From Iphione sp. A-MEVVRFRX5 (taxonomy: Eukaryota), in the NCBI GenBank assembly GCA_976226885.1, contig OZ320319.1, positions 67,270,001 through 67,334,000 of the forward strand: 64,000 nucleotides of DNA. Direction: 5' to 3'. Position 1 is the first letter of the stretch; every line of letters starts with the position of its first letter. Shown here piece by piece: positions 17,727-56,087 of this stretch. Made by a program: the position numbers and the translations under genes. The notes under the pieces are model-generated. The model was not told where the DNA came from. It saw only the letters and a list, made by a program, of their open reading frames with translations, and searched no databases.

Positions 17727-17805
17727 CTTTTCTAGAGCGTTGTGGTTTGGTTAGGTAACGCAATATTTTCTAGAGCGTTGTGGTTTGGTTAGGTAACGCA
17801 ATATT
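17727..17805. repeat. Perfect 38-bp tandem duplication
   Basis: TTTTCTAGAGCGTTGTGGTTTGGTTAGGTAACGCAATA occurs twice in tandem. Confidence 0.92.
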
Positions 17806-30320: not shown

Positions 30321-30482
30321 TTAGACGCCAACGTTGTCCTTAATCCACTGACGGAAGTAGGTTACTCTTGTGTACACTGACGGCAGGAGGGGGTGGCAAC
30401 CGTTTGGGCCCCATGATGTGACACCCGCCAGAACAAAATAGCCGCCCCTATTCTCGCAGACAAGAGGCCCACCACTGTCTCC
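30321..30482 (-). CDS. Protease exon 5
   Basis: TTTTCTTCAACAG|GDSGGPLVC...VTSWG..C....PSVYTRV..WI..NVGV*. Confidence 0.95.
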
Positions 30483-33400
30483 CTGTTGAAGAAAATCCAG
30501 AAGTGGTCCTAAGACTTTTTTCAGAGCGAAAATGAAAACCGCAAAGGAAGGGCTGAATGGAGTAATAGTCATGACATGAAAAATGTGCAAATAATTCAAA
30601 TTAATTGATTTTGTTCACATCTCAACAAGAGAGGTGAAACGATGGAAAATACCAACAGTTTCTCATGCCATATGCGATTATATATAATTATATAGTTGGC
30701 CCGCACCAGATGTACAGTTGTTCACACTTCATGATTTCATTAAGTATGACAGCAGATGTCCCTGTGACAAGTGGTGCGAAACATGTAGATCGCAGCTGCT
30801 AGAGTACCTTGTATAGCTAATTAATAAGCAGCAAAATAATAAACCAACCACCATTAAAGGCACCTAGCCATCAGTTGGATACTTCACTCATTTTATGAAT
30901 TCAAACTTTGGCTGCCTATTCATGAATTGAGTTAAAGGCACAATGCTTGTTTCATTAATTTAACTAATCCACACCAAAAGCCTTTGACGTTTAGATCTTG
31001 TGCAAAGATGGATGAATGAAGCCTCTTTTTAGCAGAAATTAAGTATGGGAGTCACTGAGAGTTTGACCCATATTCACAAATAACAGTGCGTGTTAATGGT
31101 CCCCCATTATTGGCAATTAGTTTTATATTCTACCTCCCATGCCATCGGGATGTCATCATGCTTTGCCAATACAATCGACACCTGCAGAGCAACCACCAAG
31201 GGGACTTGAGGAATTTGGTCACTTCTGCAATAGGGTTGGCCCTGGCGATGGATGTTCGCTTTCTCTCACCTAAGTGGAAGTAATAATTATTCCTTAAAAA
31301 TGCCTATGTAATTGAAGTTAAATCACACATTAGACAATGAATATCCTTTCAATGTTTTGAGCTTGGACATGTGAGGGGTTGTGGTGACATCTCTGGTCGC
31401 ACCTTAAAAGGTGAATATCTCTTCATAGCTTGGGCATGGATATCTAAGGCTGAATTTATCTTTTTATTTCATTTATTTTTCCAGGAAGTTGTACATTGTG
31501 GCAGACACACGTTGTTGGATCTTTAACATCCAACATCGTGGTCTGACTAGGTGATATGATGGATACTAATCAAACAAGATGTATATTGGATGTCAGATGT
31601 CAGATTCTGGAGGTATTGCAAAATAGTTGTCTATTGTATAATAACTGTCTATTACAACATTTCAGTATTGCAAAATCATGATATTGCACAAGCCACTATG
31701 GCTCTGTATGTATATAAAGGGCACATTTTTTTCTGAACAGATATTCTCTCTTTGCACCTTGAGAGAGTTACACCTAGCAGAAGTCCAGCAGTGGAGTGAA
31801 CAAGATTTTGCTGTGTTGAAGTTGCTTTGTCTTGGATCCCTGCCTTTCCGGCCTGTTGGTTAGAGTTCATCAAATGCTCGTATGTTATGACATGAAGATT
31901 TACCCTGATCTCATTACATTAAGTAGCATCACTAGATGATAATACATAATGAAGTAGAATGAATGATTGGACACCAATACCTGGCTTTAAAATACTGTAA
32001 GTTGGAAGATAGGTAGTAAAAGCAATTAAGTACAGACGTCGGTAGTAAAAGCAATTAAGTACAGACAACTTCGAATCTCATCGGTGAAGTACATAATTGT
32101 CTGGAAAATTGCCTTTACAGACACCACCTTTACAGTCATCACCACAGTGTTCACCAACTTTCCAGGTCTCAGCTCTATACCTTTCATATTTTCACCACAG
32201 TGTTCACCAACTTTCCAGGTCTCAGCTCTATACCTTTCATATTTTACTGCATTATTGTCTGCTTTAAACAAATTATATTTCCGATACGCCTAACGTTGAC
32301 ATAAAGGTTATTCTAAATAACAATGGAAACATAGTGCACTGATGTACAATACCTTTCAAAGTGAAGTCTTTCTCACTTGCAGTGACACTAGTCCCATTTC
32401 CTTGTAGATTCTATCTAGAGTGACCTTGTTACCAACCCTATAACCCAGTGCAATCCTGCAAGCTCTATTCAACAGAACTTCAATTTTATAGAAACTCTGG
32501 CTTTTCCATTGATTGAGCATGATGCCTCCATAGTCACATATTAGCAGAATCAGTATCTTTACCAGAATAACTATTGTATTCTGTCTATTAAGTGTCTTAT
32601 TTTTAGAAAACATCCTGATCTTCTGTGCAGTTTTTCCCATCTGGATAACTAGGTGCCGGTGGAACTCACGCTTATCATCAACAATGTACCCTAGGTATCT
32701 GTACACTGAAACCACTTCATTAGAGTGTCCATTTAGGACAAGTGACAGATGTCCAACATTATCTTTTCCCCTCTTTTTTAGGATGACATGCACTGCCTTG
32801 GTTTTTGAGCTATTCATAATGATTCTGTTTATAAGACACACAGAGCAATTCTATTCATCTGCCTAGAGGTGGGATTGGATCTCCTATAATGAGTTGCCAG
32901 CATACACAATTGCCATATCATCTACATACAGAAATGCATGTGAGTATGTTAGTATTTCAGCTATAGCATTTATCATAACTAGGAATAGAGTTGGCCCAAG
33001 GGCAGAGCCTTGTGGCATCCTAGAGATGAGTTCAGCATAACCAAACAATTTCCCGTTTACCCTGGTGCGTTATTTTTTTATTAGGTAGCTGGCAAACCAT
33101 TTCCAGATTTTCACCCCTACTTGCTGGGGTTTGTTAAATGCTTGGGAAAAATCAAAGAAAACAACCCCTGCAATTTTGGCATTGTTAGTTTTTTTTTATG
33201 TAGCAGACCAGTTAATGCAGCAGCTGCTTGAGCAGTGCTTCCATTCTTGCATAAGACAAAGCAGATCACAGGATATTATTATATTCCAGGTACTCGGTAA
33301 GTTGTTTGCATATTACCTGCTCCAGAAGTTTGAAGCCATGCCAAGCACACTAACAGGGTGATAATTTGACACTTTTTCTCTTGCACACCTTTTGAAAATC

Positions 33401-36400
33401 AGTGTCACAGTAGGTAGTTTCATATCTTTAGGGAAGATATTAGTGCATATTGAGCAATTTATAAGTATGGATACCCTGTCAATGAGTGGAAGGAAGGCAT
33501 CCTTCCATACTCATTTTCACCATGCACAGTCCAGAAGGTATTCTATCCTTCAAGGTTGAAACTAGCTTTATAACCTCCTTGTATGTTTTAGTTGTAACAT
33601 AGTATAGGTGCTACAGGGATCATGTGATGCCTTGTCCATTTTCTTCTCCAGGTTTACCCCTACATTCAGATAGTAATTATTAATGTAACATAGCAGCATG
33701 TCACACTCAACTGGCCCTCCTGTGTCATCGTTTAGAATCAGTGGTTTGTTAGTACAGTATTTTGTTTCTTTCTGGACCAATATTGTAGATTAGTTCGTGG
33801 TACCACCAGCATAAGGATAAGTAAGACTACCTGATGCACCCTGTACTATTACAGTTCATAGTAAAACCAATATAAGGCTAAGTCAGACTGTTCCTGATGC
33901 ACTCTGTACTAAAACAGTTCATGGTTCTGCCAGCATAAGGCTAAGGAAGACTGTACCTGATGCTCTCTGTATTAAAAGGGTTCGTGGTATCACCAGTGTA
34001 AGGTTAGGTGAGTCTGAATCTGATGCAATCTGAGCCAGCTTGTGGTACCACCAACAACTGTTAATGAGGGATTACACTTAATGAACTAAGGGCCCCTGCT
34101 TGTGGCACCACCAATGATGTATAGGTTAAAATTTCCACTTGGTGCCCTAACCTAGCTAGAAGATGACATTGGGCCCTGGAGATCCAGGCACCTTCTACTT
34201 TGTAACTAGCTGTCTCTAATCTGATTGGTGGAAAGCACTAACACAAGTCAGTTTGTAACCACTTTGTTCTTTCATTCATTACATTGCTGCTATGACACCT
34301 GGCCACCTGGCCTTTGGACTGGCTATAAATATGGACCCTGTGTGGCCAATGAACCACTCTGCACTTGGATACCATTGTGGAACTTGTCTCTTCAGGGGAG
34401 TCTATAGGAACACATATCCACTTGGACTATCACAGGGGAGGACTTACTGGTTGGGCTTAGCCAAGGATTGCATGGAGTAACTCAAGCCACAACTGTAGTG
34501 GATATAGCTGGAATTACCAAGTGGGAGTATTAACACACATGCTACACTAAGATTAACTAGGTCAGGACTAGGAATACAATAGCTGGATTTACCCAGTGGA
34601 ATACAAACATGCATATTACAATATGATTTAGGATTGATGTTGGAGGATTGTACCTTATTTTTCACATAATCCCCTTTGGCTCCTCTGATCGTTTGGCTAG
34701 TCTTCTTTTAGCTATTCTAGCCTGCAATAGGTCCTCAGGAGTTTTTATTGCTCTTGTCCACTGAAAGTATGCATCCCTTCCCCTAATTAGCTTCTTTATA
34801 TCAGTGTTAAACCAGCTATATGATCACCCAGGAAAAGTATTCCTTATCCTAAAAGGATACAGTTTACCCACTACCTTTGTGATACACAGCTTTGAGGAAA
34901 TGCCATTTTAGATTATTATTGGTCCAGAATGAAAATGTCAGTTTATATTAGAGTAAGCTCCAACTTTAACCACTATAACCCCCTCCCTCCAGTCAGTGGG
35001 CTTTTTGGTGAAGAACTGGCAGGGACCATTGAGATTTGGCTACCCCTAAGGGTGAAAAACGTCGTTTTGTACTAAATATTGTAGTCTCCCCCCAAGAGTC
35101 GGTTGCCCCGGGCAGTTGGTTGTCCCTTTTATCCATTTTGGAGAAAATACACTAAGAATTGTTCTATTCTGACCAAGGTTGGTCTCTCCTATGAGTTCGT
35201 CTCCCCTAGAAGTTGGTAGCTAACTGAGGTTTGCCTGCAATTGCAGCACATGAAGCAAGGATTCCCATCTAGAACAGGTTGGAAAACAATTGATTCAGGG
35301 CTGATAACAACACTAAACAATGGTGTGAAACGTTTTTCAGCACACTGAACATCATCTGGTCACCAAATTGTCCTCCATAGTAAGGTTTGTTTCTACCTAC
35401 TGCGGGAGGAGAGGTATAACTTTACAACATGCAGGTGAACAATTTCACATCAACAAACATCATGCCTTCCATTTGTTCAATCTCACCATACATACTCTGG
35501 AAGATAATAATGCTCTCATTGGACAAATCTGTGGATAACCGATCATCTCCTTTCTTGTTGGCCTGCTTTCCATCTTGTATTCCTCCTATCTGCTAGTAAG
35601 ACTGATGACCCATAGTGTCTCCAGAGTTGAACACCCTTCAATTAGATGCAGGTCGTAAAACATCTACTGTGCAGCTTGCAACTGCAGTCTTCATGCTAGT
35701 TCATATTAAAAATATTTAAGCTTCATAAAAAGGACCATGCCTAATGCTCCCACTTACAGGTCCACTGAGCACATGTTTTGCTACTTAATCAAATATGTTG
35801 ATGTAGAGTACTATGTCAATCAACAATGCCAAGGAAATTGAGAACTATATAACATATTGTTGCATAGGTGAACTGTGTGGGGGGCAGGTTGTGCATAGTG
35901 TGTGCAGGTCAAGGTGTGCTAAGTGCATGCATAGCAGTACATGCAGGGCAGTGTGTGGAGGACAGTGCGTGTGGGGCAGGTGTAAGTGTGGCATTTTGTG
36001 CAGAGTGCATGTGGGGCAAGTATGTGTAGGGCAAGTGCATGTGGGCAAATGCAGCGCAGTGCATGTGGGGCAGGTTGTGCTTGATAGCTCCACACCAGAG
36101 ACTTTATAAGAGTGCTTGGTGAAGGAACCCAGTCAGTCTACTGTTTGTTGTTGGATCATGCACGTCAAGCTGTACTTTTGGAATAAACACCTCTTAAACT
36201 TTACTCTGGAATCATGAGTCTTCGTAGTGGGTGACTACATAACAATATCAAAAAAGAAAATAAAATCTGACTCTTTTAAATGGGAAAAACCAACACTCCC
36301 CCCAAAACAACAAAAATCTTCAAACTAATTTTTTTTAAGTAAAGAAAAGTTTATATGATAGAGTGATGCGTCAGTATCAACACTAGAAATAAACATCTAG

Positions 36401-39400: not shown

Positions 39401-42400
39401 ATGGCATCACAAGAGGTCACAAACAAGGTGTACAGCACAAGGTATGTAGTACAAAAGTGTTTTCTGATTTTCGGTCCAAGGTAAGTACTTTACAAGTCAA
39501 CTTGACAGGGATTCAATAAAATGTATCTGCTAATGAATAATACGCAATGACTTCATCATGAAACCTTACCTGAATTACATGGACTTACATTACAAGAACC
39601 TTTCTTTCCCCACACGCCAATGCAGATGTGCCCATCGTTGATCTGCCCAGGCCAAGCATTCTTACAGTGCTCCTGGGTGTACACATCAATATGCGCTTCT
39701 TGCAATATCTCCGCCACCTTCCCATTTGGACCGGCTGTGATAAAGATAATTCAGTCAATTCAGCTTTAAGGTATAAATCTATGTACAAGTTTTATCTCGC
39801 ATTTGTATTGATAAATCCGATTTATTTCCACTAATGCTTATTCTAATAGATTTAACAGAGAGACTTGAGAATTTCTATTACAACTTCCCCTCCTATACAT
39901 TAGAGATTTTTCGATGACTAGATTACTACCATTCTGAACATACTTTCCGTGTAGCCCCATCCCGTTATCCAACAGTTGGGGTGGTTGGCAAAGTCATCAT
40001 CCTCCGCGAGTTTAATCGCTGCGATATGCGTTCCTTTAGCTGAGGAGTTCAACTTCATGAGGGCTATATCATTTGGTAGAGATCCGCTCCCACTGCCGTA
40101 TTTAGGGTGCTACTCGAAAAACAGAACTCTTTCTTGATTTCTGTCATACTCAAATGACAAGTAAAGGAAGATTTAGGATAACAACACTGGATAAACATGT
40201 ATGTAACGCATACATAGAGATAGGTATTTATTGATATATGTGATGGAGATAACTGACAGAAATAACACTGTTGTGATTAAAAGATATAGATACTATACAC
40301 ATGTGCATGTCTTGTACGTCCACCACCAGGGGAAGGATCTGGGCTATCTGCACCTTCCTGTCATTGGGGGTGAGGACTTATCCCCATGCACCTAGGCTAT
40401 ATGCAACCTGTTAGTTGGCATAAAACCTACACAAGCATACGCAAGCATACACAAGCATAAACAAGCATACACAAGGTGGCATAGTCCGGGAGGGCCAGAC
40501 CATCCCTGTTCGACCCGCACGTGCCCAGTGGCAGGTCTGGACCGTCTGCACACGTGGGGATAATTACACTACACATATAAAACGTTGTGCAAAAATAGTC
40601 CGGCCATGGGGAGAAACTCTCAAGGGTATGAGACTCTTTTAAAACCTTATAATATGTTTTCTTTCATTGGTTATTGTAATCTTTTTTAGAATAATAAATA
40701 CTACCATGTATTTTGAGGTAGAAAACAGAATATAAAAGAAAGCAGAGCAAAATTTGGGCACTACTTTTTCATTTGACTGTAGTAATACACCAAAAACCTT
40801 TGTGTTCAGTCAAGCAGAACTGAGGGTTGTAAATAGTAGATAAGGCAGGGTCAGGGAGAGAGAGTATGTGTGTGTGTCTGGAGGGGGGGCGGCGAAGGCG
40901 CTTGTTCAATTAAAATTGCCTTGTTTGGTCTAGCTGGGTAGTCCACCACAGGAAGGAGGTCTGGATAGTTTGCACACATAGGTATAGCACCTTACTTTTC
41001 ATAAAACATAAGAATGGGGACCTACACAATACAGTGGAGTCTCTTTTTCCGAACTCTGAGATTTCTGACCAAAACGCCCATTCGGACCATTTGAGCTTGG
41101 AACCAAAATTCTGCCTATAATCAATACAGGAGGTGATCAGTTTCCGACCAAATCGATTTCCTACCGATTTCAGCTTCCTACCAATCTATAAAAGATCAAT
41201 TGTGGTATATTTAACTATCAATTTAGGACCATTTGAACACTCTGATGTACCTCACGCCCTTGAGGAACTGGTTGGGAGAGGCCGGGGGCATCAATGGTTA
41301 CCACTCTGATGTCTCTCCTCTGTTAATGACTGAAAAAGTGGTCGAGAGAGGCCGGGGGCGTCAACGGCGACCTCTCTGATATTGAAAGGGATATTGTCTC
41401 CAGCCCAAACCCCCTACTCAATCGATTTCCGACCATTCTCGCCATTCCTACCGTTTGAGCTCGGAACAGAGTATATAGGGGTCGGAAATAGAGACTCCAC
41501 TGTAGTTAATCCATCTGCATCTTACCGATATAATGGAGGCTATACTATATGTCTGACCTCCTTTGCTTTGGAAGTTACTGCCAAAAAGTACGGAATATCT
41601 TCGCCTGTTGAAAAAATGGATTTATGATTACATAATAGTAATAAGCAGCCGCCTGAACTGGAATTGAAGGTAGATTGATCGGCCGTATCCTTCCTCCCAG
41701 TCTCGTGACATAAACGTGTCTTATTTCACTACTGCCTCCATCTCACATGACACAGACTGTCACCCCACCATTGTCACAGTCTTGACCCAAGCAGAAAAAT
41801 TGATCACAAATAGCTATTAACCATCGGAACAGAGTATATAGGGGTCGGAAATAGAGACTCCACTGTAGTTAATCCATCTGCATCTTACCGATATAATGGA
41901 GGCTATACTATATGTCTGACCTCCTTTGCTTTGGAAGTTACTGCCAAAAAGTACGGAATATCTTCGCCTGTTGAAAAAATGGATTTATGATTACATAATA
42001 GTAATAAGCAGCCGCCTGAACTGGAATTGAAGGTAGATTGATCGGCCGTATCCTTCCTCCCAGTCTCGTGACATAAACGTGTCTTATTTCACTACTGCCT
42101 CCATCTCACATGACACAGACTGTCACCCCACCATTGTCACAGTCTTGACCCAAGCAGAAAAATTGATCACGAATAGCTATTAACCATCGGCAACCTCATT
42201 TACCGCATGTCAGCGTGAGGGCCACACAGTTACCACTACGGTCTTGATATCAACAAAACATCCACACATCGGCCCTAGAAAGGTCACTCGTGGCTTTTAA
42301 CCCCTTCCTGATCACTCATAGGCTTATCCGCCCAATTGGGTGGATAAGCCTACAGATACATAAACAGAAATCTACATGAAATCTGGGCATTGTTTCTCCA

Positions 42401-48592: not shown

Positions 48593-49027
48593 CACGTGGA
48601 GAGCGCACATACACCAGTGCGAGTGCTGAAGGCACTTGTTGCACTTAAAACAGTACCCTGATAACAAAGTTTCCCACAACGACGACAGTCATATTTATGC
48701 ATAAAATTCATGTTATTCGCATTTTTCATCTCAAAACTAGACGTGTGTTGATTTCATCTCGAGATTCAACATATTTTAAAAAAACTAAAAGACTTTATCG
48801 ATATGTATATGTTGTGCTTACGTGCTCAGTTGAGAACAGTGAGCGGCCGTCAATAACCAGTTTTCGGCTATAAGTGAGCAGCCGCAAGCGTGCGAACCAT
48901 CCACCCGCAACGAACCCTGCCAGGGATATTTGCCGTCTTGAGTTACGTCATTCCCACCGATGATCAAGGGAAGGTGCCATGCATTTGCTTCAGCCCAAAT
49001 AGCCACTGCCAGTAGAAGGAGAAACAT
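30321..49027 (-). CDS. Secreted chymotrypsin-like S1A serine protease (252 aa; resembles annelid fibrinolytic/digestive proteases); exons 49027-48822, 41967-41889 (duplicate 41604-41526), 40109-39944, 39734-39589, 30482-30321
   Basis: All junctions are GT-AG and in phase (2,0,1,0); the CDS totals 759 nt. Signal peptide, IIGG mature N-terminus, LTAAHC (His), NDIALMKL (Asp), GDSGGP (Ser), and cysteines for the four canonical disulfides. AATAAA on the minus strand at 30083-30088. Confidence 0.95.
32012..32245. repeat. Two adjacent short tandem duplications (29-bp and 53-bp period)
   Basis: GGTAGTAAAAGCAATTAAGTACAGAC at 32012 and 32041. CACCACAGTGTTCACCAACTTTCCAGGTCTCAGCTCTATACCTTTCATATTTT at 32140 and 32193. 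Confidence 0.9.
32340..35720 (-). mobile_element. Decayed CR1/L2-type LINE ORF2 in protease intron 4, interrupted by a repeat-rich insert (~33620-34680)
   Basis: Minus strand: [17 protein letters not shown] and IRGAKGDYV (34700-34840), NYHPVSVL (~33350), FFDFSQAF (~33150), [10 protein letters not shown] (~33010), VYAGN (degenerate YADD), [10 protein letters not shown] (32700). Weak endonuclease-like motifs at 35200-35700. Confidence 0.75.
33793..34030. repeat. ~62-bp minisatellite, about 4 copies
   Basis: Units start GTTC(G/A)TGGT at 33793, 33854, 33917 and 33980; they share ATAAGG.TAAG..AGACT...CTGATGC.C.CTGTA. Confidence 0.8.
35796..36244 (+). mobile_element. Possible solo LTR containing a GT-rich tract
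   Basis: Terminal inverted motif TGTTGATGTAG...CTACATAACA, TTATAAGA at ~36105 and AATAAA at 36182. No exact TSD. Confidence 0.5.
38200..38400 (-). mobile_element. tRNA-derived SINE-like remnant
   Basis: Minus strand GCAGGTTCAATCCTGGG (~38375-38392) resembles a Pol III B box. The body TACTCTT.TTTCAAATAAGT..TGGGTT..TGTGCA..TCCTATACAC resembles conserved invertebrate SINE domains (recognised from memory only). Confidence 0.35.
39589..39734 (-). CDS. Protease exon 4
   Basis: CAG|(T)[13 protein letters not shown]...[14 protein letters not shown]|GTAAGT. Confidence 0.95.
39944..40109 (-). CDS. Protease exon 3
   Basis: TAG|[20 protein letters not shown]...[10 protein letters not shown]|GTATGT. 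Confidence 0.95.
40429..40475. repeat. 10-bp minisatellite (ACAAGCATAC)n
   Basis: About 4.5 copies with single substitutions. Confidence 0.85.
40563..40915. mobile_element. Unclassified dispersed repeat, copy 1 (copy 2 at 48183-48647)
   Basis: TTACACTAC..ATATAAAACGTTG..AGTCCGGCCATGGGGAG...AGTAATACACCAA...CAGTCAAGCAGAAC.GAGGGTTGTAAAT.GTAGATAAGG is shared by both copies. Both end in a microsatellite and GAAGGC(G/A)CTTGT; a related end lies at 45250-45285. Confidence 0.8.
41032..41502. mobile_element. 471-bp Tc1/mariner (pogo/Tigger-like) MITE with TA target duplication
   Basis: TA|CAGTGGAGTCTCTTTTTCCGA ... TCGGAAATAGAGACTCCACTG|TA. The TIRs are 21 bp with 1 mismatch. Confidence 0.88.
41526..41604 (-). 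CDS. Protease exon 2, copy B (identical duplicate)
   Basis: Same sequence and splice sites as copy A, offset by 363 bp. Confidence 0.85.
41889..41967 (-). CDS. Protease exon 2, copy A
   Basis: TTTTTTCAACAG|...|GTAAGA. 79 nt encoding (T)[26 protein letters not shown], which bridges AAHC to HPKY in frame. Confidence 0.88.
42301..43414. mobile_element. 1114-bp non-autonomous piggyBac-like element
   Basis: TTAA|CCCCTTCCTGA ... TCAGGAAGGGG|TTAA: perfect TTAA duplication (42297-42300, 43415-43418) and CCC-type TIRs. No transposase ORF. Confidence 0.88.
46412..46545. mobile_element. Partial copy of the 25598-25954 MITE family
   Basis: AGGCCAAAAAAATGCATGTGTTTCTGGTTA...AAAACCTAGGTAGGGAGGGGG...GGTTTTCAACAATCATAAAGACAATAT. 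Confidence 0.75.
46818..46940. repeat. ~42-bp degenerate minisatellite, about 3 copies
   Basis: ATAT(G/A)CCTCACTT(T)CCAC.AAAAAA at ~46818, 46861 and 46901. Confidence 0.7.
47437..47598. repeat. 31-bp minisatellite, about 5.2 copies
   Basis: Units start at 47437, 47468, 47499, 47530, 47561 and 47592. Consensus AATTCAGTACTTTTAGGACTCTTACTC.TCA. Confidence 0.88.
48183..48647. mobile_element. Unclassified dispersed repeat, copy 2, containing (GA)n at 48537-48590
   Basis: Colinear with 40563-40915. Confidence 0.8.
48822..49027 (-). CDS. Protease exon 1 (signal peptide to AAHC)
   Basis: [25 protein letters not shown]...[10 protein letters not shown]; donor AC|GTAAGC. Confidence 0.95.
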
Positions 49028-52155: not shown

Positions 52156-52355
52156 TTACACGTAGTCAATGTCCCAGTGCTGGTTGTCGCTTCCCTGGTA
52201 GTCCCACATGCACATATGCGCTCCCTTATCCGAGTCGTTGTTCTTGATGTCAAGGCACTTGCCGGGATCGCGGAGGTTAACAATTCGCGCGCCGTCGATG
52301 GCAAAGCCCTGGTTCATGTTGTTCTGGTCGAATGGGTTGACAACGATGTCACCAC
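52156..52355 (-). CDS. Lectin coding exon 5
   Basis: GTGTAG|(S)GDIVVNPFD...CLDIKNN...DNQHWDIDYV*. Confidence 0.93.
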
Positions 52356-55300
52356 CTACACAGCAGAAGTAGACGACATACTTTCAGTGGTGATTTGGGA
52401 ATTAAATGATTGGAATAAAGTGCTCATATATAAATTATAATAGATGGAACCCATAAAAAGGCAGACATCATGAAAGAATCAGACAACAGAGTAATTAAAT
52501 TAATTAAATTCACGCATTACGAGCTGGCTTTACGACGTACACATCGCTTTTCAAGTTTTGGTCCACATTGGATAAGAATCAGAAATCTAAAATGATCAAA
52601 CAGGTGTGTATTTGTTGTGGGGGCAGCTGTTGGGTCGGAAGATATAGGAAACGTATTGAAAACACTATGTGACGACTTGGTTAGGCCCTTTCCTCATTGA
52701 ATGCTACCGAGTATGTCATGTATTGAGAACACTAATATCGTCCTCCACACAGAGGGGCGAATCTGCTCACTTGAGGCATCCAGGACGAAGTCGTTGAGTT
52801 TGGAGCGAATGAGGCCATAGTGGTCCTCATACCAGAGTTGGTTGTCAGCGCCCGACTGTTCCCACATAATGACGTCAGTATCCGCGTCAGGACTAGCCCC
52901 GTCGATGTCCAGAACAAGGCCGTTTAGGGCGGAACGGATGAAGAAATAGGCTTGGTCCCTATTTGAAATGGGAGTAGGGGTAATTGAGTAAATGTACGTT
53001 TTGGTTCCCCATGACACTACAGGCACTGTTGTATGCTACAATATATATAGCAATGATAACAACGAAGAGGATGTCACAAAAAAAGGTGTGGCCAGACAAC
53101 TTTGTGCAGTTGGTCAAACTGAAAGAAAATATTTTGCATTTGTCAAAGATATAAAAGGAGCAACCGTTTTATATTTCGGGTAACAATATTAACATTTAAT
53201 ATTCGTGAGAAAGTTTTTAACTGGGGTTACATTAATTTCAGGCTATGACCGCCACACTTAAGTAACATTCAATGATGGAACATGTTTTTGATGGGGAGCA
53301 CTCAAAGTGAGCTCTGATAACTCAAGTAAGGGGAGAGGTAAAACATGTGGTGATAACGTGGAAAATATTATTGGGCCTTACAGATAGTTGAAGGACCAGA
53401 CTTGGTTGTTTCCACCGTTGAAATCATAGAGGCAGACGCGAGCGCCCTCACAGTCGTCACAGTTCGCCACGTCGAGAACCTACGGAAGAAAAAGGTCAGC
53501 TTATCATCCTCCCAAATGTCTGCGTTAAGACGACACATGTCGTGGGCAAACATGCAGAGTACATGTGCACATGTACGTTGATTTTGTATAAGGCCACAAA
53601 AAAATAGGTGTGTTTCTGGTAACGACCAGCCAAAAACCTAGGTAGGGAGGGGGGGTATCTTTTTTTTCTTTTCATTTTTTTCAACTTTCTTCCTCTGGTT
53701 TTCAATAATAATAAAGACAATATGAAGAAATGAGAACAATTTGCATGAGTTTTACAGTTTTTTTATTGAATTTCCATGGGTTTTGTTGTTTTTCCACTGA
53801 ATTTACCAAAAATATCCATGATGAAACACATACCTAAGGAAATTCAGCCTTGGAATATAGAAGTAATCCAGTACAAAGGCATAGCCTTTTTTTTGAAAAC
53901 ATGTTGCCACGCTCGTGAATAAACTCTTACAAAGCTAACGTGAAATGATATGTGGAAAAAACAGACACGAAAGGCGGGTGACTCATGTCTACCAACTTAA
54001 AATAGAATTGACAATTGAGACTCTAACATGGGAAGCTGCAGGTGGCAGCAGTGTCTGTTTGCACTTGCGGTGACAAAGAATATAAATGAAATCTGTCACG
54101 GTAATAATACATGTAATCTACATGGAAACTGCATGAAGAATCAGCATGGTTCCCTTACATTTGACACTGATATTGAGGATGGAAATAATCCATTAAAGCA
54201 ACGTTCCCTTTCCCACTCCTGACAGCCCGTTTTATATGAATACTCCTGGAGTCTGCAGGGAAATACATGTACACGTATGGAATCATTTTGTATGTAAGCA
54301 GGCTCAAAGTTGAGAGCCAAAAAATTAATCAATTTCTCGTCTCTTTAGGCTCAGAGCAAAACAAGGGCAACTGAAATGTAAATGCGGGTACGCTTAGTTC
54401 ACTTTGACGCGGTTTCGTCTGTGGAAATAGCCAGTTTACCTTGCCGGGATCTGCAAGCATGTGGACACGGTCATCTCCACACAGCAGCTTCTGGCTGACG
54501 CTGCCTTCATCGTGTGGGTTGATCACAAGATCGCCATCTAGAAACAAAACAAGGACACGGTTAATACATGTGAGTGCAAGGCCGGGCACAAGGCACCGCC
54601 TGTCTTTCGACATTGTTAAATCGCGAGTTTAGAATGTTTCGCACGTGTTCGCATCAAAATGGGGTATACATGGGCACGTAGATGCCGCCACTATGGTCAG
54701 TAATTAATTCACGTTATTCTGCGTCCTTCTAGTTCCATGCTTTATTGCCTGCTATTGGACGTAGTGCATTTTGTCTGATACAGTCGGCCCACCCGCCAGC
54801 AAGGCTGATGGTTTCCTGTGAATGCGTTCAGGTGTGGGAGGTGTTCGGGTATGAGGTCCCTCTGATGCATGTCCTGACACATTGTCCTGACCCAGCCCCA
54901 AACCACTGTTTTTCAGTAATTGTCACACTTGGTACACTCAGCCCTTAGTATATGGAGTATTAGAGTACTTGTACCTTCAATTTGTGCAATATCAAGCGTT
55001 CATGTTCAGAAAGGGAATCGTTTGAAAACCCGTACCGTTTGGTTCCTGATCACGGCATTCGGATATGAGATTAGTTTAGATGTGCTGCGTCTGGATAGAG
55101 TGGGCTGACTGTATATAGCTTTTATGTGATTAGGCCTACAATGAAAAAAATCGATCCTTCCCTCTGGCCTGTTTGACCTTTGTTTTGCAAAACTATTGTT
55201 TTGCGAATAACTTGAGAATGAGTAATGTTAGAGATTAACAATGGAAAAGTACATGTATATTGAAAAATATTTTTTAAAAACAAAAAAACACTGACCTACC

Positions 55301-55651
55301 AACACTACTTTTTTTACCTTAGCGGGAATACAGATATAATTTGGGTGGGCCCTACCAGAAGAGCACTCTGTGTCAAACTACGATTTAATGGTAGAAACAA
55401 TACTAGGTGTCTGCAAAACCACTATGTAAGAATGATACCGACTGTTAGCACTTACCAGAATCAATGTCCAAGACATAATCGTGGTTGAGCTTTGAGCGGA
55501 TGACCCCAGAATAAATGTCCTGGTACCAGAGCTGGTTATCCTGGCCGTTGTGCTGCCAGGTGACCACGCGGGTGCCTGGCTCGGCCCTGGCGCCCTCTAC
55601 GTCAAGGACGTATCCGTTGAGGGCGCTGGCGATCGTGAAGTATGTGGGCAT
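52156..55651 (-). CDS. Tandem-repeat ricin-B (R-type) lectin, EW29-like, 259 aa; exons 55651-55456, 54537-54440, 53479-53382, 52958-52771, 52355-52156
   Basis: All junctions are GT-AG and in phase (1,0,2,1); the CDS totals 780 nt. Two beta-trefoil domains each carry YF.I.SALNG.VLD.....DNQLWY.D...IRSKLN and LD....NQ.W motifs. No signal peptide. AATAAA on the minus strand at 51862-51867. Confidence 0.93.
52771..52958 (-). CDS. Lectin coding exon 4
   Basis: AAATAG|(L)DQAYFFIRSALNGLVLDIDG...NQLWYED...FVLDAS|GTGAGC. Confidence 0.93.
53382..53479 (-). CDS. Lectin coding exon 3
   Basis: TTCCGTAG|VLDVANCDDCEGARVCLYDFNGGNNQVWSFNY|GTAAGG. Confidence 0.9.
53589..53850. mobile_element. Truncated copy of the 25598-25954 MITE family in lectin intron 2
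   Basis: TAAGGCCACAAAAAAATAGGTGTGTTTCTGGTAAC...CCTAAGGAAATTCAGCC, colinear with 25598-25860. Confidence 0.82.
54440..54537 (-). CDS. Lectin coding exon 2
   Basis: TTTCTAG|(D)GDLVINPHDEG...LADPGK|GTAAAC. Confidence 0.9.
55456..55651 (-). CDS. Lectin coding exon 1
   Basis: MPTYFTIASALNGYVLDVEG...DNQLWYQD...VLDIDS; donor G|GTAAGT. Confidence 0.93.
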
Positions 55652-56087
55652 GCTTTCATAGGGCGGAAGATAATATGTTTGAAGAATTAGTTTATTTCGT
55701 CAATTTAATGATCTGGTCGGTTCATTGATCTTAAGCACTATCGGAACTTTTGCCGTCCATGAGCGAGTTTTAGCAATTATCTGCGGACAAAATGATAAAT
55801 AGTATCTAATCTTCCAAATGCAGTTTACCAGAAAATATGTCGTTCAGAAACAGCAAGATACATGCGTTGTACAAAATGTTCTACATTATCTTTAAGTCAA
55901 AATGTATGAGTAGCCTATTCTAAAAAAAAGTAATCACAAGTATCGGATTTCTCTTATACCGACATTAGTATTTATAAGCTGTTATCAAATATCACTGAAT
56001 TGATTCGATGGAGAGGTTAGTAGAAAATGAAATCTTATGCAGTAAGATGGCTGCTAACATATTGGTGACAATATGGTGGTGAGCGAT

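What the first reader, a model, noticed from the sequence alone, without database searches (positions are those of the whole stretch)
41461..42190. Protease exon 2 is tandemly duplicated with both copies splice-competent
Two identical 79-nt exons with identical splice sites lie 363 bp apart. The exon is phase 2 to phase 0, so including both shifts the frame upstream of the catalytic Asp and Ser. Functional mRNA needs exactly one copy. The allele is therefore a natural null/hypomorph filtered by NMD or a very young substrate for mutually exclusive splicing. One mismatch and a TCGG junction microhomology fit a recent real event, but a haplotype or assembly artefact is possible.
Basis: partly seen in the sequence, partly recalled or inferred. 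Interest (0 to 1): 0.7.

Follow-up and report, generated by a model that had tools for sequence, protein, structure and literature searches.

The report
Young tandem duplication of protease exon
A 363-base piece of an otherwise intact digestive-type (trypsin-family) protease gene of an invertebrate, holding one whole small exon with its splice sites, has very recently been copied in tandem. Splicing in both copies breaks the reading frame, which is a known and fairly ordinary kind of gene-disrupting variant, though a jumping-element hairpin could partly rescue it.

Summary
Window 41461-41823 and 41824-42186 are tandem copies of a 363-bp unit with one mismatch, a CpG transition, and a 4-bp TCGG junction microhomology.

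Each copy carries a 79-nt exon with AG/GT sites. This is exon 2 of a five-exon, minus-strand S1 (Pfam Trypsin) protease gene.
- One copy gives a 759-nt ORF of 252 codons.
- Both copies give a stop nine codons into the second copy, before the catalytic Asp and Ser.
- Neither copy also shifts the frame.

Five distant paralogs in the same genome each have one 76-nt exon there, with the same phases. No other copy of the unit exists in the 1.18-Gb assembly.

Most likely this is a real, very young, microhomology-mediated duplication that makes a null or hypomorphic allele. An assembly artefact cannot be excluded without reads.

New here: the left breakpoint lies inside a Tc1/mariner-like MITE. Its right terminal repeat is therefore duplicated behind each exon copy, while the left repeat stays single. 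That is the "one docker, two selectors" layout proposed for the birth of mutually exclusive exons. Folding favours the pairing that loops out the downstream copy. This rescue is untested.

The scan noted other exon-edge tandem duplications elsewhere in this genome.

The parts
41461..41823 (.). Copy A of the 363-bp duplicated unit. In the gene's orientation this is the downstream copy.
41824..42186 (.). Copy B of the 363-bp unit, the upstream copy in the gene's orientation. The novel junction lies at 41823/41824.
42187..42190 (.). TCGG microhomology. It repeats the first 4 bases of the unit, at 41461-41464 and 41824-41827.
   Evidence: chance about 1.6%
41811..41811 (.). The only difference between the copies: A here, G at 42174. 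It is a CpG transition in the intron, 207 nt upstream of the acceptor.
41889..41967 (-). Exon 2, upstream copy. 79 nt, AG/GT, phase 2 to 0, encoding [26 protein letters not shown].
41526..41604 (-). Exon 2, downstream copy, identical 79 nt. Read after the first copy it gives AKIFRTFWQ followed by a stop.
41575..41577 (-). Premature TAA created when both copies are spliced in. It lies 49 nt before the exon 2/exon 3 junction, and two more junctions lie further downstream.
48822..49027 (-). Exon 1 (coding part). It holds the ATG, a hydrophobic leader, IIGG and the catalytic His in TAAHC. The donor is GTAAGC and the exon ends in phase 2.
   Evidence: (Trypsin profile 1-45, E 1.8e-12)
39944..40109 (-). 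Exon 3, holding the catalytic Asp in NDIAL.
   Evidence: (Trypsin profile 77-131, E 1.4e-8)
39589..39734 (-). Exon 4.
   Evidence: (Trypsin profile 133-177)
30321..30482 (-). Exon 5, holding the catalytic Ser in GDSGGP and the stop codon.
   Evidence: (Trypsin profile 177-220, E 2.7e-13)
41030..41504 (.). Tc1/mariner-like MITE in intron 2. It has TA target duplications, 28-nt terminal inverted repeats, internal 70-bp repeats and many copies in the genome. The left breakpoint of the duplication (41461) lies 44 nt inside the MITE's right end.
41030..41057 (-). Left terminal repeat of the MITE, present once. It is the candidate 'docker' in the pre-mRNA.
41477..41504 (-). Right terminal repeat, original copy. 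It is the candidate proximal 'selector', starting 21 nt after the donor of the downstream exon copy.
41840..41867 (-). Right terminal repeat, duplicated fragment. It is the candidate distal 'selector', starting 21 nt after the donor of the upstream exon copy. Pairing it with the docker loops out the downstream exon copy.

Best explanation
A very recent microhomology-mediated tandem duplication of 363 bp occurred inside an otherwise intact five-exon S1 (chymotrypsin-fold) serine protease gene of an invertebrate. The likely mechanism is a replication template switch or end joining at TCGG. The duplication copied the whole 79-nt exon 2 with its acceptor, donor and flanking intron. The two copies have the same splice signals and are separated by a normal-sized 284-nt intron. 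The default outcome (inferred) is therefore that both are spliced in. That shifts the frame and stops translation nine codons into the second copy. The product would be about 104 residues, with the catalytic His but without the Asp and Ser, on an mRNA that fits the rule for nonsense-mediated decay. Only transcripts that skip one copy encode the 252-residue enzyme. The allele is thus a null or, more likely, a hypomorph, and is probably a polymorphism of the sequenced animal. Shown here: the duplication, the gene model, the frames and the single-copy state in paralogs. Inferred: the splicing outcome, NMD, and that the duplication is real in the animal.
For: The microhomology and the single CpG-type mismatch come. 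The gene model has canonical GT-AG sites throughout. One copy gives 759 nt (mod 3 = 0) with no internal stop. Both copies give TAA at 41577-41575. Neither copy gives a frameshift. Pfam Trypsin hits cover profile positions 1-45 (exon 1), 77-131 (exon 3), 133-177 (exon 4) and 177-220 (exon 5). This leaves exactly positions 46-76 for one exon 2. The triad motifs TAAHC, NDIAL and GDSGGP are present. Five paralogs on contig C1 have a single 76-nt exon in the same place with the same phases, flanked by introns of roughly 290-550 nt. The unit and the exon occur nowhere else in the 1.18-Gb assembly. The MITE family alignment runs unbroken across the left breakpoint in copy A but not in copy B, so copy B's 44-nt MITE end is the derived piece. 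Two-copy tandem duplications of 97% or more identity with period 100 or more were absent from 200 kb of random sample, so this is not a pervasive assembly pattern. In C. elegans, double inclusion of homologous exons whose length is not a multiple of three is removed by NMD in 14 of 19 clusters (PMC4165533).
Against: No reads, RNA or population data were available, so neither the reality of the duplication in the animal nor any splicing outcome was tested. The docker/selector layout found here could make skipping of one copy frequent, in which case the allele would be nearly normal. Exon 2 alone gave no Pfam or PDB hit (26 residues). Its assignment rests on frame, profile gap and the paralog exons. 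The closest paralog is only about 50% identical in exon 3 and no ortholog was examined. Nothing therefore shows that the gene was under selection before the event.
Confidence: 0.68

Rival explanations
1. Incipient mutually exclusive splicing through competing RNA structures. The single left MITE repeat (docker, 41030-41057) pairs with either of the two identical right repeats (selectors, 41477-41504 and 41840-41867). Pairing with the distal selector puts the downstream exon copy in a loop of about 780 nt, so it is skipped and a normal one-copy mRNA results. Transcripts that use the proximal selector include both copies and are removed by NMD. The allele would then keep much of its function.
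For: The layout is the mirror image of Figure 3a of Ivanov and Pervouchine 2018. There, duplicating an exon together with only one arm of an intronic stem-loop creates two selectors for one docker. With a downstream docker, both selectors are transcribed before it and have equal chances (PMC6071210). The arms are 28 nt long and 89% complementary. The duplex has 22 pairs with one mismatch, at -37.0 kcal/mol. In the minimum-energy and centroid folds of 991 nt, the docker pairs with the distal selector. The pairing probability is about 1 for the distal selector and 0 for the proximal one. Forcing each pairing in four windows of 881-1351 nt favours the distal one by 2.4-7.8 kcal/mol of ensemble energy. 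Inverted repeats of about 30-40 nt can bring splice sites together in cells (PMC4201285).
Against: Equilibrium folding of 1-kb RNAs is unreliable. The whole-region z-score is only -1.64. The proximal pairing has the shorter loop (419 against 782 nt) and may win kinetically. Liang and Wilusz stress that thermodynamics alone does not predict the effect. Only one of the two pairings gives exclusivity, so this is at best a one-sided mechanism. With identical exons there is no benefit for selection to act on.
Confidence: 0.2
2. Assembly artefact. The animal has one copy, and the assembler wrote a stretch twice, for example from two haplotypes differing at the one mismatched site.
For: The copies are almost identical, and the single difference could be a heterozygous SNP. 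No second assembly or read set was available. The window holds two further perfect small tandem duplications, 38 bp and 53 bp units.
Against: The duplication lies inside a gap-free stretch (no N in the 64-kb window) of a 98-Mb contig in an 89-contig assembly. It is not at a contig end, where false duplications usually sit (my knowledge). The junction has a 4-bp microhomology expected by chance only about 1.6% of the time, which fits a biological repair event. No duplication of similar size was found in 200 kb of random sample. Collapse, not expansion, is the usual assembly error for short tandem repeats (my knowledge).
Confidence: 0.12
3. Real duplication in a gene that was already dispensable or silent. 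It would then be a neutral step in the decay of one of many protease genes, with no phenotype.
For: The genome holds many trypsin-family genes, including a cluster of at least eight on contig C1. Redundancy could make loss of one gene tolerable.
Against: All other exons are open, all splice sites are canonical and the catalytic triad motifs are intact. However, the event is too young for decay to show, so this weighs little. No close paralog exists (best about 50% identity in exon 3).
Confidence: 0.1

Closest known systems
Tandem exon duplication as the origin of mutually exclusive exons (Kondrashov and Koonin 2001; Letunic, Copley and Bork 2002, as cited in PMC4165533)
   Same: Two adjacent homologous exons of equal length and phase. 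The length is not a multiple of three, so only single inclusion keeps the frame. NMD is a known backstop for such clusters.
   Different: Known clusters are old, diverged and encode different peptides. Here the copies are identical, so there is no protein diversity and no evidence that splicing is exclusive. This would be the state just after the duplication.
Docker/selector competing RNA structures and the Ivanov-Pervouchine duplication model (PMC6071210)
   Same: An exon was duplicated together with one arm of an intronic stem-loop. This leaves one docker and two identical selectors, with the docker downstream as in 14-3-3 zeta, Mhc and MRP1.
   Different: The stem is a transposon terminal repeat, not a conserved regulatory element. 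No expression data exist. Only the distal pairing would enforce single inclusion.
Out-of-frame intragenic exon duplications known as loss-of-function alleles in human genetics, such as single-exon duplications in DMD and the BRCA1 exon 13 duplication (my knowledge, not checked here)
   Same: A tandem duplication of a whole exon with its splice sites. Both copies are normally spliced in, giving a frameshift and a premature stop.
   Different: The unit here is much smaller (363 bp against kilobases) and sits in a wild invertebrate genome. The consequence is unknown.
'Mirage' minisatellites that copy exon-intron borders, reported by this scan's other agents for the same genome (s1-347239, s1-347242)
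   Same: Tandem duplication in the same genome that copies splice signals.
   Different: Those are multi-copy arrays whose short unit straddles one exon edge. This is exactly two copies of a 363-bp unit holding a whole exon with both splice sites.

Membership tests
S1 / chymotrypsin-fold serine peptidase (Pfam PF00089 Trypsin) | Significant match to the Trypsin domain profile over its length | tested here: met
   The exons were searched one by one. Profile positions 1-45, 77-131, 133-177 and 177-220 were hit, all above the 20.6-bit cut-off. Positions 46-76 correspond to exon 2, which is too short to score alone.
S1 / chymotrypsin-fold serine peptidase (Pfam PF00089 Trypsin) | Catalytic triad His, Asp and Ser in their conserved motifs, and an I-I/V-G-G mature N-terminus | tested here: met
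   TAAHC and IIGG lie in exon 1, NDIAL in exon 3 and GDSGGP in exon 5.
Mutually exclusive exon pair derived from tandem duplication | Adjacent homologous exons of the same length and phase | tested here: met
   Two identical 79-nt exons, phase 2 to 0, 284 nt apart.
Mutually exclusive exon pair derived from tandem duplication | Exactly one of the exons is present in mature mRNA | not testable with these tools
   No transcript data are available.
Mutually exclusive exon pair derived from tandem duplication | Steric block: the intron between the exons is too short to be spliced | tested here: not met
   The intervening intron is 284 nt. Paralog introns of about 290-550 nt are evidently spliced.
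Mutually exclusive exon pair derived from tandem duplication | Spliceosome incompatibility (U2 against U12 type sites) | tested here: not met
   Both copies have the same AG and GTAAGA sites.
Mutually exclusive exon pair derived from tandem duplication | Frame-dependent removal of double inclusion and double skipping (exon length not a multiple of three) | tested here: met
   79 nt. Both copies give a stop at 41577-41575, and neither copy gives a frameshift. NMD itself was not testable.
Docker/selector competing RNA structure | One docking sequence complementary to a selector next to each exon variant, with the pairings mutually exclusive | tested here: inconclusive
   The sequence layout is present: 28-nt arms, duplex -37 kcal/mol, distal pairing favoured in silico. 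No conservation or functional data exist.
Tc1/mariner-type MITE | TA target-site duplication, terminal inverted repeats, small size without an ORF, many copies | tested here: met
   TA lies at 41030-41031 and 41503-41504. The terminal repeats are 28 nt and 89% complementary. The first look found 1221 candidates in the genome, of which 40 were scored, giving 51 matches. Scored copies are 73-88% identical and end at the same base. Full-length relatives with varying numbers of the internal 70-bp repeat were found.
'Mirage' splice-junction minisatellite | Multi-copy array whose short unit straddles a single exon-intron border | tested here: not met
   Exactly 2.0 copies of a 363-bp unit that holds the entire exon.

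The most novel reading that the evidence does not exclude
This locus is a natural 'time zero' of the birth of mutually exclusive exons. A single duplication copied an exon plus one terminal repeat of an adjacent transposon. That instantly created one docker and two selectors, which make part of the transcripts skip one copy, while frame and NMD remove the rest. If so, transposon hairpins in introns could be a general source of ready-made docker/selector systems.
Probability: 0.15. Interest if true: 0.6.

Novelty: new member of a known kind. Interest (0 to 1): 0.33.

Why it matters
As it stands this is one more young out-of-frame exon duplication, a well known class of loss-of-function variant, in one of many protease genes of an invertebrate. 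Its value lies in being almost unaged. Both copies and their introns are still identical, and a transposon hairpin arm was copied with the exon. A simple RT-PCR or minigene test could therefore ask directly what the splicing machinery does immediately after an exon duplication. It could also ask whether competing RNA pairings alone can impose single inclusion. So far that question has been argued mainly from old, diverged exon clusters (PMC6071210).

Tried and rejected
- **Exon 2 alone:** searches against Pfam and PDB sequences (E up to 10) gave nothing, because 26 residues are too short. The paralog exons were used instead.
- **Own-genome searches:** I looked for a second, single-copy allele or a close paralog of the unit or of exon 2. 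Only the two copies themselves were found.
- **'Mirage' minisatellite reading:** rejected, because there are two copies of a unit holding the whole exon.
- **Steric or U12-type exclusivity:** rejected.
- **Joined spliced protein:** it was never built for, or sent to, any search or fold. Exons were searched one by one by reference. The frame check translated each exon separately in its inherited phase.
- **Large protein searches:** the searches of the big protein collections and their representative sets were not used, because the family scan already settled what the protein is.
- **Origin of the contig:** I do not take it for human. It carries ricin-type lectin exons and a MITE family, and other notes of the scan call the animal a worm.

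Full report
**The observation**

The stretch 41461-42190 is a head-to-tail duplication of a 363-bp unit. The repeat finder and an alignment with flanks place copy A at 41461-41823 and copy B at 41824-42186. Similarity ends sharply on both sides.

The only difference is 41811 A against 42174 G. The context is ACAA against ACGA, so it is a CpG transition. The four bases after copy B, TCGG at 42187-42190, repeat the start of the unit. The ancestral sequence therefore had TCGG at both breakpoints. I calculate about 1.6% for four or more bases of junction microhomology by chance.

**The gene**

A six-frame scan found one TAAHC motif (near 48850) and one GDSGGP motif (near 30482) in the window, both on the minus strand. 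Reading the open segments and the DNA at their borders gives a five-exon model:

| Exon | Coordinates | Length |
|---|---|---|
| 1 (from the ATG) | 49027-48822 | 206 nt |
| 2 | one of two copies, listed below | 79 nt |
| 3 | 40109-39944 | 166 nt |
| 4 | 39734-39589 | 146 nt |
| 5 (through TAA) | 30482-30321 | 162 nt |

- All introns are GT-AG.
- The exons were searched against Pfam one at a time, by reference. The joined protein was not built for any search.
- They hit Trypsin (PF00089) at profile positions 1-45, 77-131, 133-177 and 177-220. The missing slot, 46-76, is where exon 2 belongs.
- IIGG, His in TAAHC, Asp in NDIAL and Ser in GDSGGP are all present.

**Exon 2 and the frames**

On the minus strand each copy holds the same 79-nt exon, at 41967-41889 (upstream in the transcript) and 41604-41526 (downstream). 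Each follows ...TTTTTTCAACAG and precedes GTAAGA. The exon enters in phase 2 and leaves in phase 0.

- With one copy the coding length is 759 nt, with no internal stop, giving 252 residues.
- With both copies the second is read as AKIFRTFWQ followed by TAA at 41577-41575. That stop lies 49 nt before the next junction, with two more junctions further on. The truncated product lacks the Asp and Ser.
- With neither copy the frame is also lost.

Sequence is shared for 219 nt upstream of the two acceptors, with one mismatch 207 nt away from the acceptor. It is identical for 65 nt downstream of the two donors. I see no sequence basis for the spliceosome to tell the copies apart. The intron between them is 284 nt.

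**Is one copy the normal state?**

The closest relatives in the same genome are only 40-53% identical in exon 3. Most lie in a cluster on contig C1.

In five of them (L014, L015, L017, L018, L019) the stretch between the TAAHC exon and the exon that starts with His holds one small exon. It reads ...YYSVGFGSVYWRS...QII... and is 76 nt long where I could count it. It has the same phases, and the flanking introns are roughly 290-550 nt. A single exon 2 is therefore ancestral, and introns the size of the new 284-nt one are ordinary here.

Neither the unit nor the exon 2 peptide occurs anywhere else in the 1.18-Gb, 89-contig assembly.

**A transposon at the breakpoint**

The left flank of the duplication is a repeated element. 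The own-genome search returned 51 matches out of 1221 first-look candidates, most covering window 41384-41504 at 73-88% identity and ending at the same base.

The element spans 41030-41504. It has TA on both sides, 28-nt terminal inverted repeats starting CAGTGG (89% complementary) and internal 70-bp repeats. Full-length relatives carry varying numbers of those repeats. I read it as a Tc1/mariner-type MITE.

It ends 21 nt after the donor of exon 2. The left breakpoint (41461) lies 44 nt inside its right end. Copy B therefore carries a detached second right terminal repeat (41840-41867), while the left repeat (41030-41057) remains single. Another first-stage note on this stretch (s1-352027) saw the same geometry as a TIR-bounded 834-bp unit around an exon, and I confirm that geometry.

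**What most likely happens**

The event looks like a microhomology-mediated tandem duplication and is very young, with one substitution in 363 bp. By default I expect both copies to be spliced in, giving a premature stop and NMD. The allele would then be a null or hypomorph.

This is inference. It rests on the general behaviour of out-of-frame exon duplications (my knowledge) and on C. elegans data. There, double inclusion of exons whose length is not a multiple of three rises in an NMD mutant in 14 of 19 clusters (PMC4165533).

**A possible rescue**

Ivanov and Pervouchine proposed that duplicating an exon with one arm of an intronic stem-loop creates two selectors competing for one docker. 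Pairing with the far selector loops out and skips one exon copy. A downstream docker gives both selectors equal chances (PMC6071210). This locus has exactly that layout.

- The duplex has 22 pairs with one mismatch, at -37.0 kcal/mol.
- In a 991-nt fold, both the minimum-energy and the centroid structures pair the docker with the distal selector, enclosing the downstream exon copy.
- The pairing probability is about 1 for the distal selector and 0 for the proximal one.
- Forced pairings in four windows favour the distal one by 2.4-7.8 kcal/mol.

These are equilibrium predictions on long RNAs. The overall z-score is only -1.64, the proximal loop is shorter, and experiments show that thermodynamics alone does not decide such effects (PMC4201285). 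I give this reading about 0.2.

**Artefact?**

I could not test this. The points against it:
- The window has no N.
- The site is internal to a 98-Mb contig.
- The junction has microhomology.
- 200 kb of random genome held no two-copy duplication with a period of 100 or more at 97% or higher identity.

The points for it are the near identity of the copies and the lack of any independent data. I put it near 0.12.

**Comparison and verdict**

This is a new example of a known kind, a young out-of-frame tandem exon duplication. It is not a 'mirage' minisatellite, the class that other agents reported in this genome, because it is exactly two copies of a unit with a whole exon.

Interest is modest. 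It is raised somewhat by the docker/selector layout, which makes the immediate consequences of exon duplication directly testable.

Noticed in passing
window 52159-55699, minus strand: Several open segments upstream of the protease gene encode ricin-type beta-trefoil lectin repeats (Pfam RicinB_lectin_2 and Ricin_B_lectin, E 1e-6 to 7.5e-10). This is probably one or two multi-exon lectin genes on the same strand. I did not test whether they are separate from the protease gene.
   Followed up: partly
window 41032-41865: After the duplication, the left MITE repeat and the detached second right repeat bracket 834 bp that include the downstream exon 2 copy. This composite unit could in principle be moved by a Tc1/mariner transposase. 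It was also noted by another first-stage reader (s1-352027).
   Followed up: partly
window 17728-17805 and 32139-32245: Two further perfect two-copy tandem duplications, with units of 38 bp and 53 bp at 100% identity. The second lies inside the transposon-derived part of intron 4. In 200 kb of random genome only one such small event (a 32-bp unit) was seen.
   Followed up: partly
window 32359-33510, minus strand (intron 4 of the protease gene): Broken open segments with reverse-transcriptase-like motifs (for example YVDD in the segment 33069-32887) suggest a decayed retroelement in the 9-kb intron 4. Two of the flanking segments gave no Pfam hit at E 0.01.
   Followed up: partly
window 41871-41879 with 41977-41985, and the same in copy A: A short stem of 7-9 bp (AAUCCAU with AUGGAUU) brackets each exon 2 copy in the predicted fold, so the duplication also doubled both of its arms. 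It is too weak to weigh, but it adds further possible cross-pairings between the copies.
   Followed up: no
G000 contig C1, about 12.84-12.95 Mb (L014-L020): A cluster of at least eight trypsin-family genes sharing the exon layout of the window's gene. Two of them (L014, L017) appear to use a GC donor (CAG|GCATGT) after exon 2.
   Followed up: no
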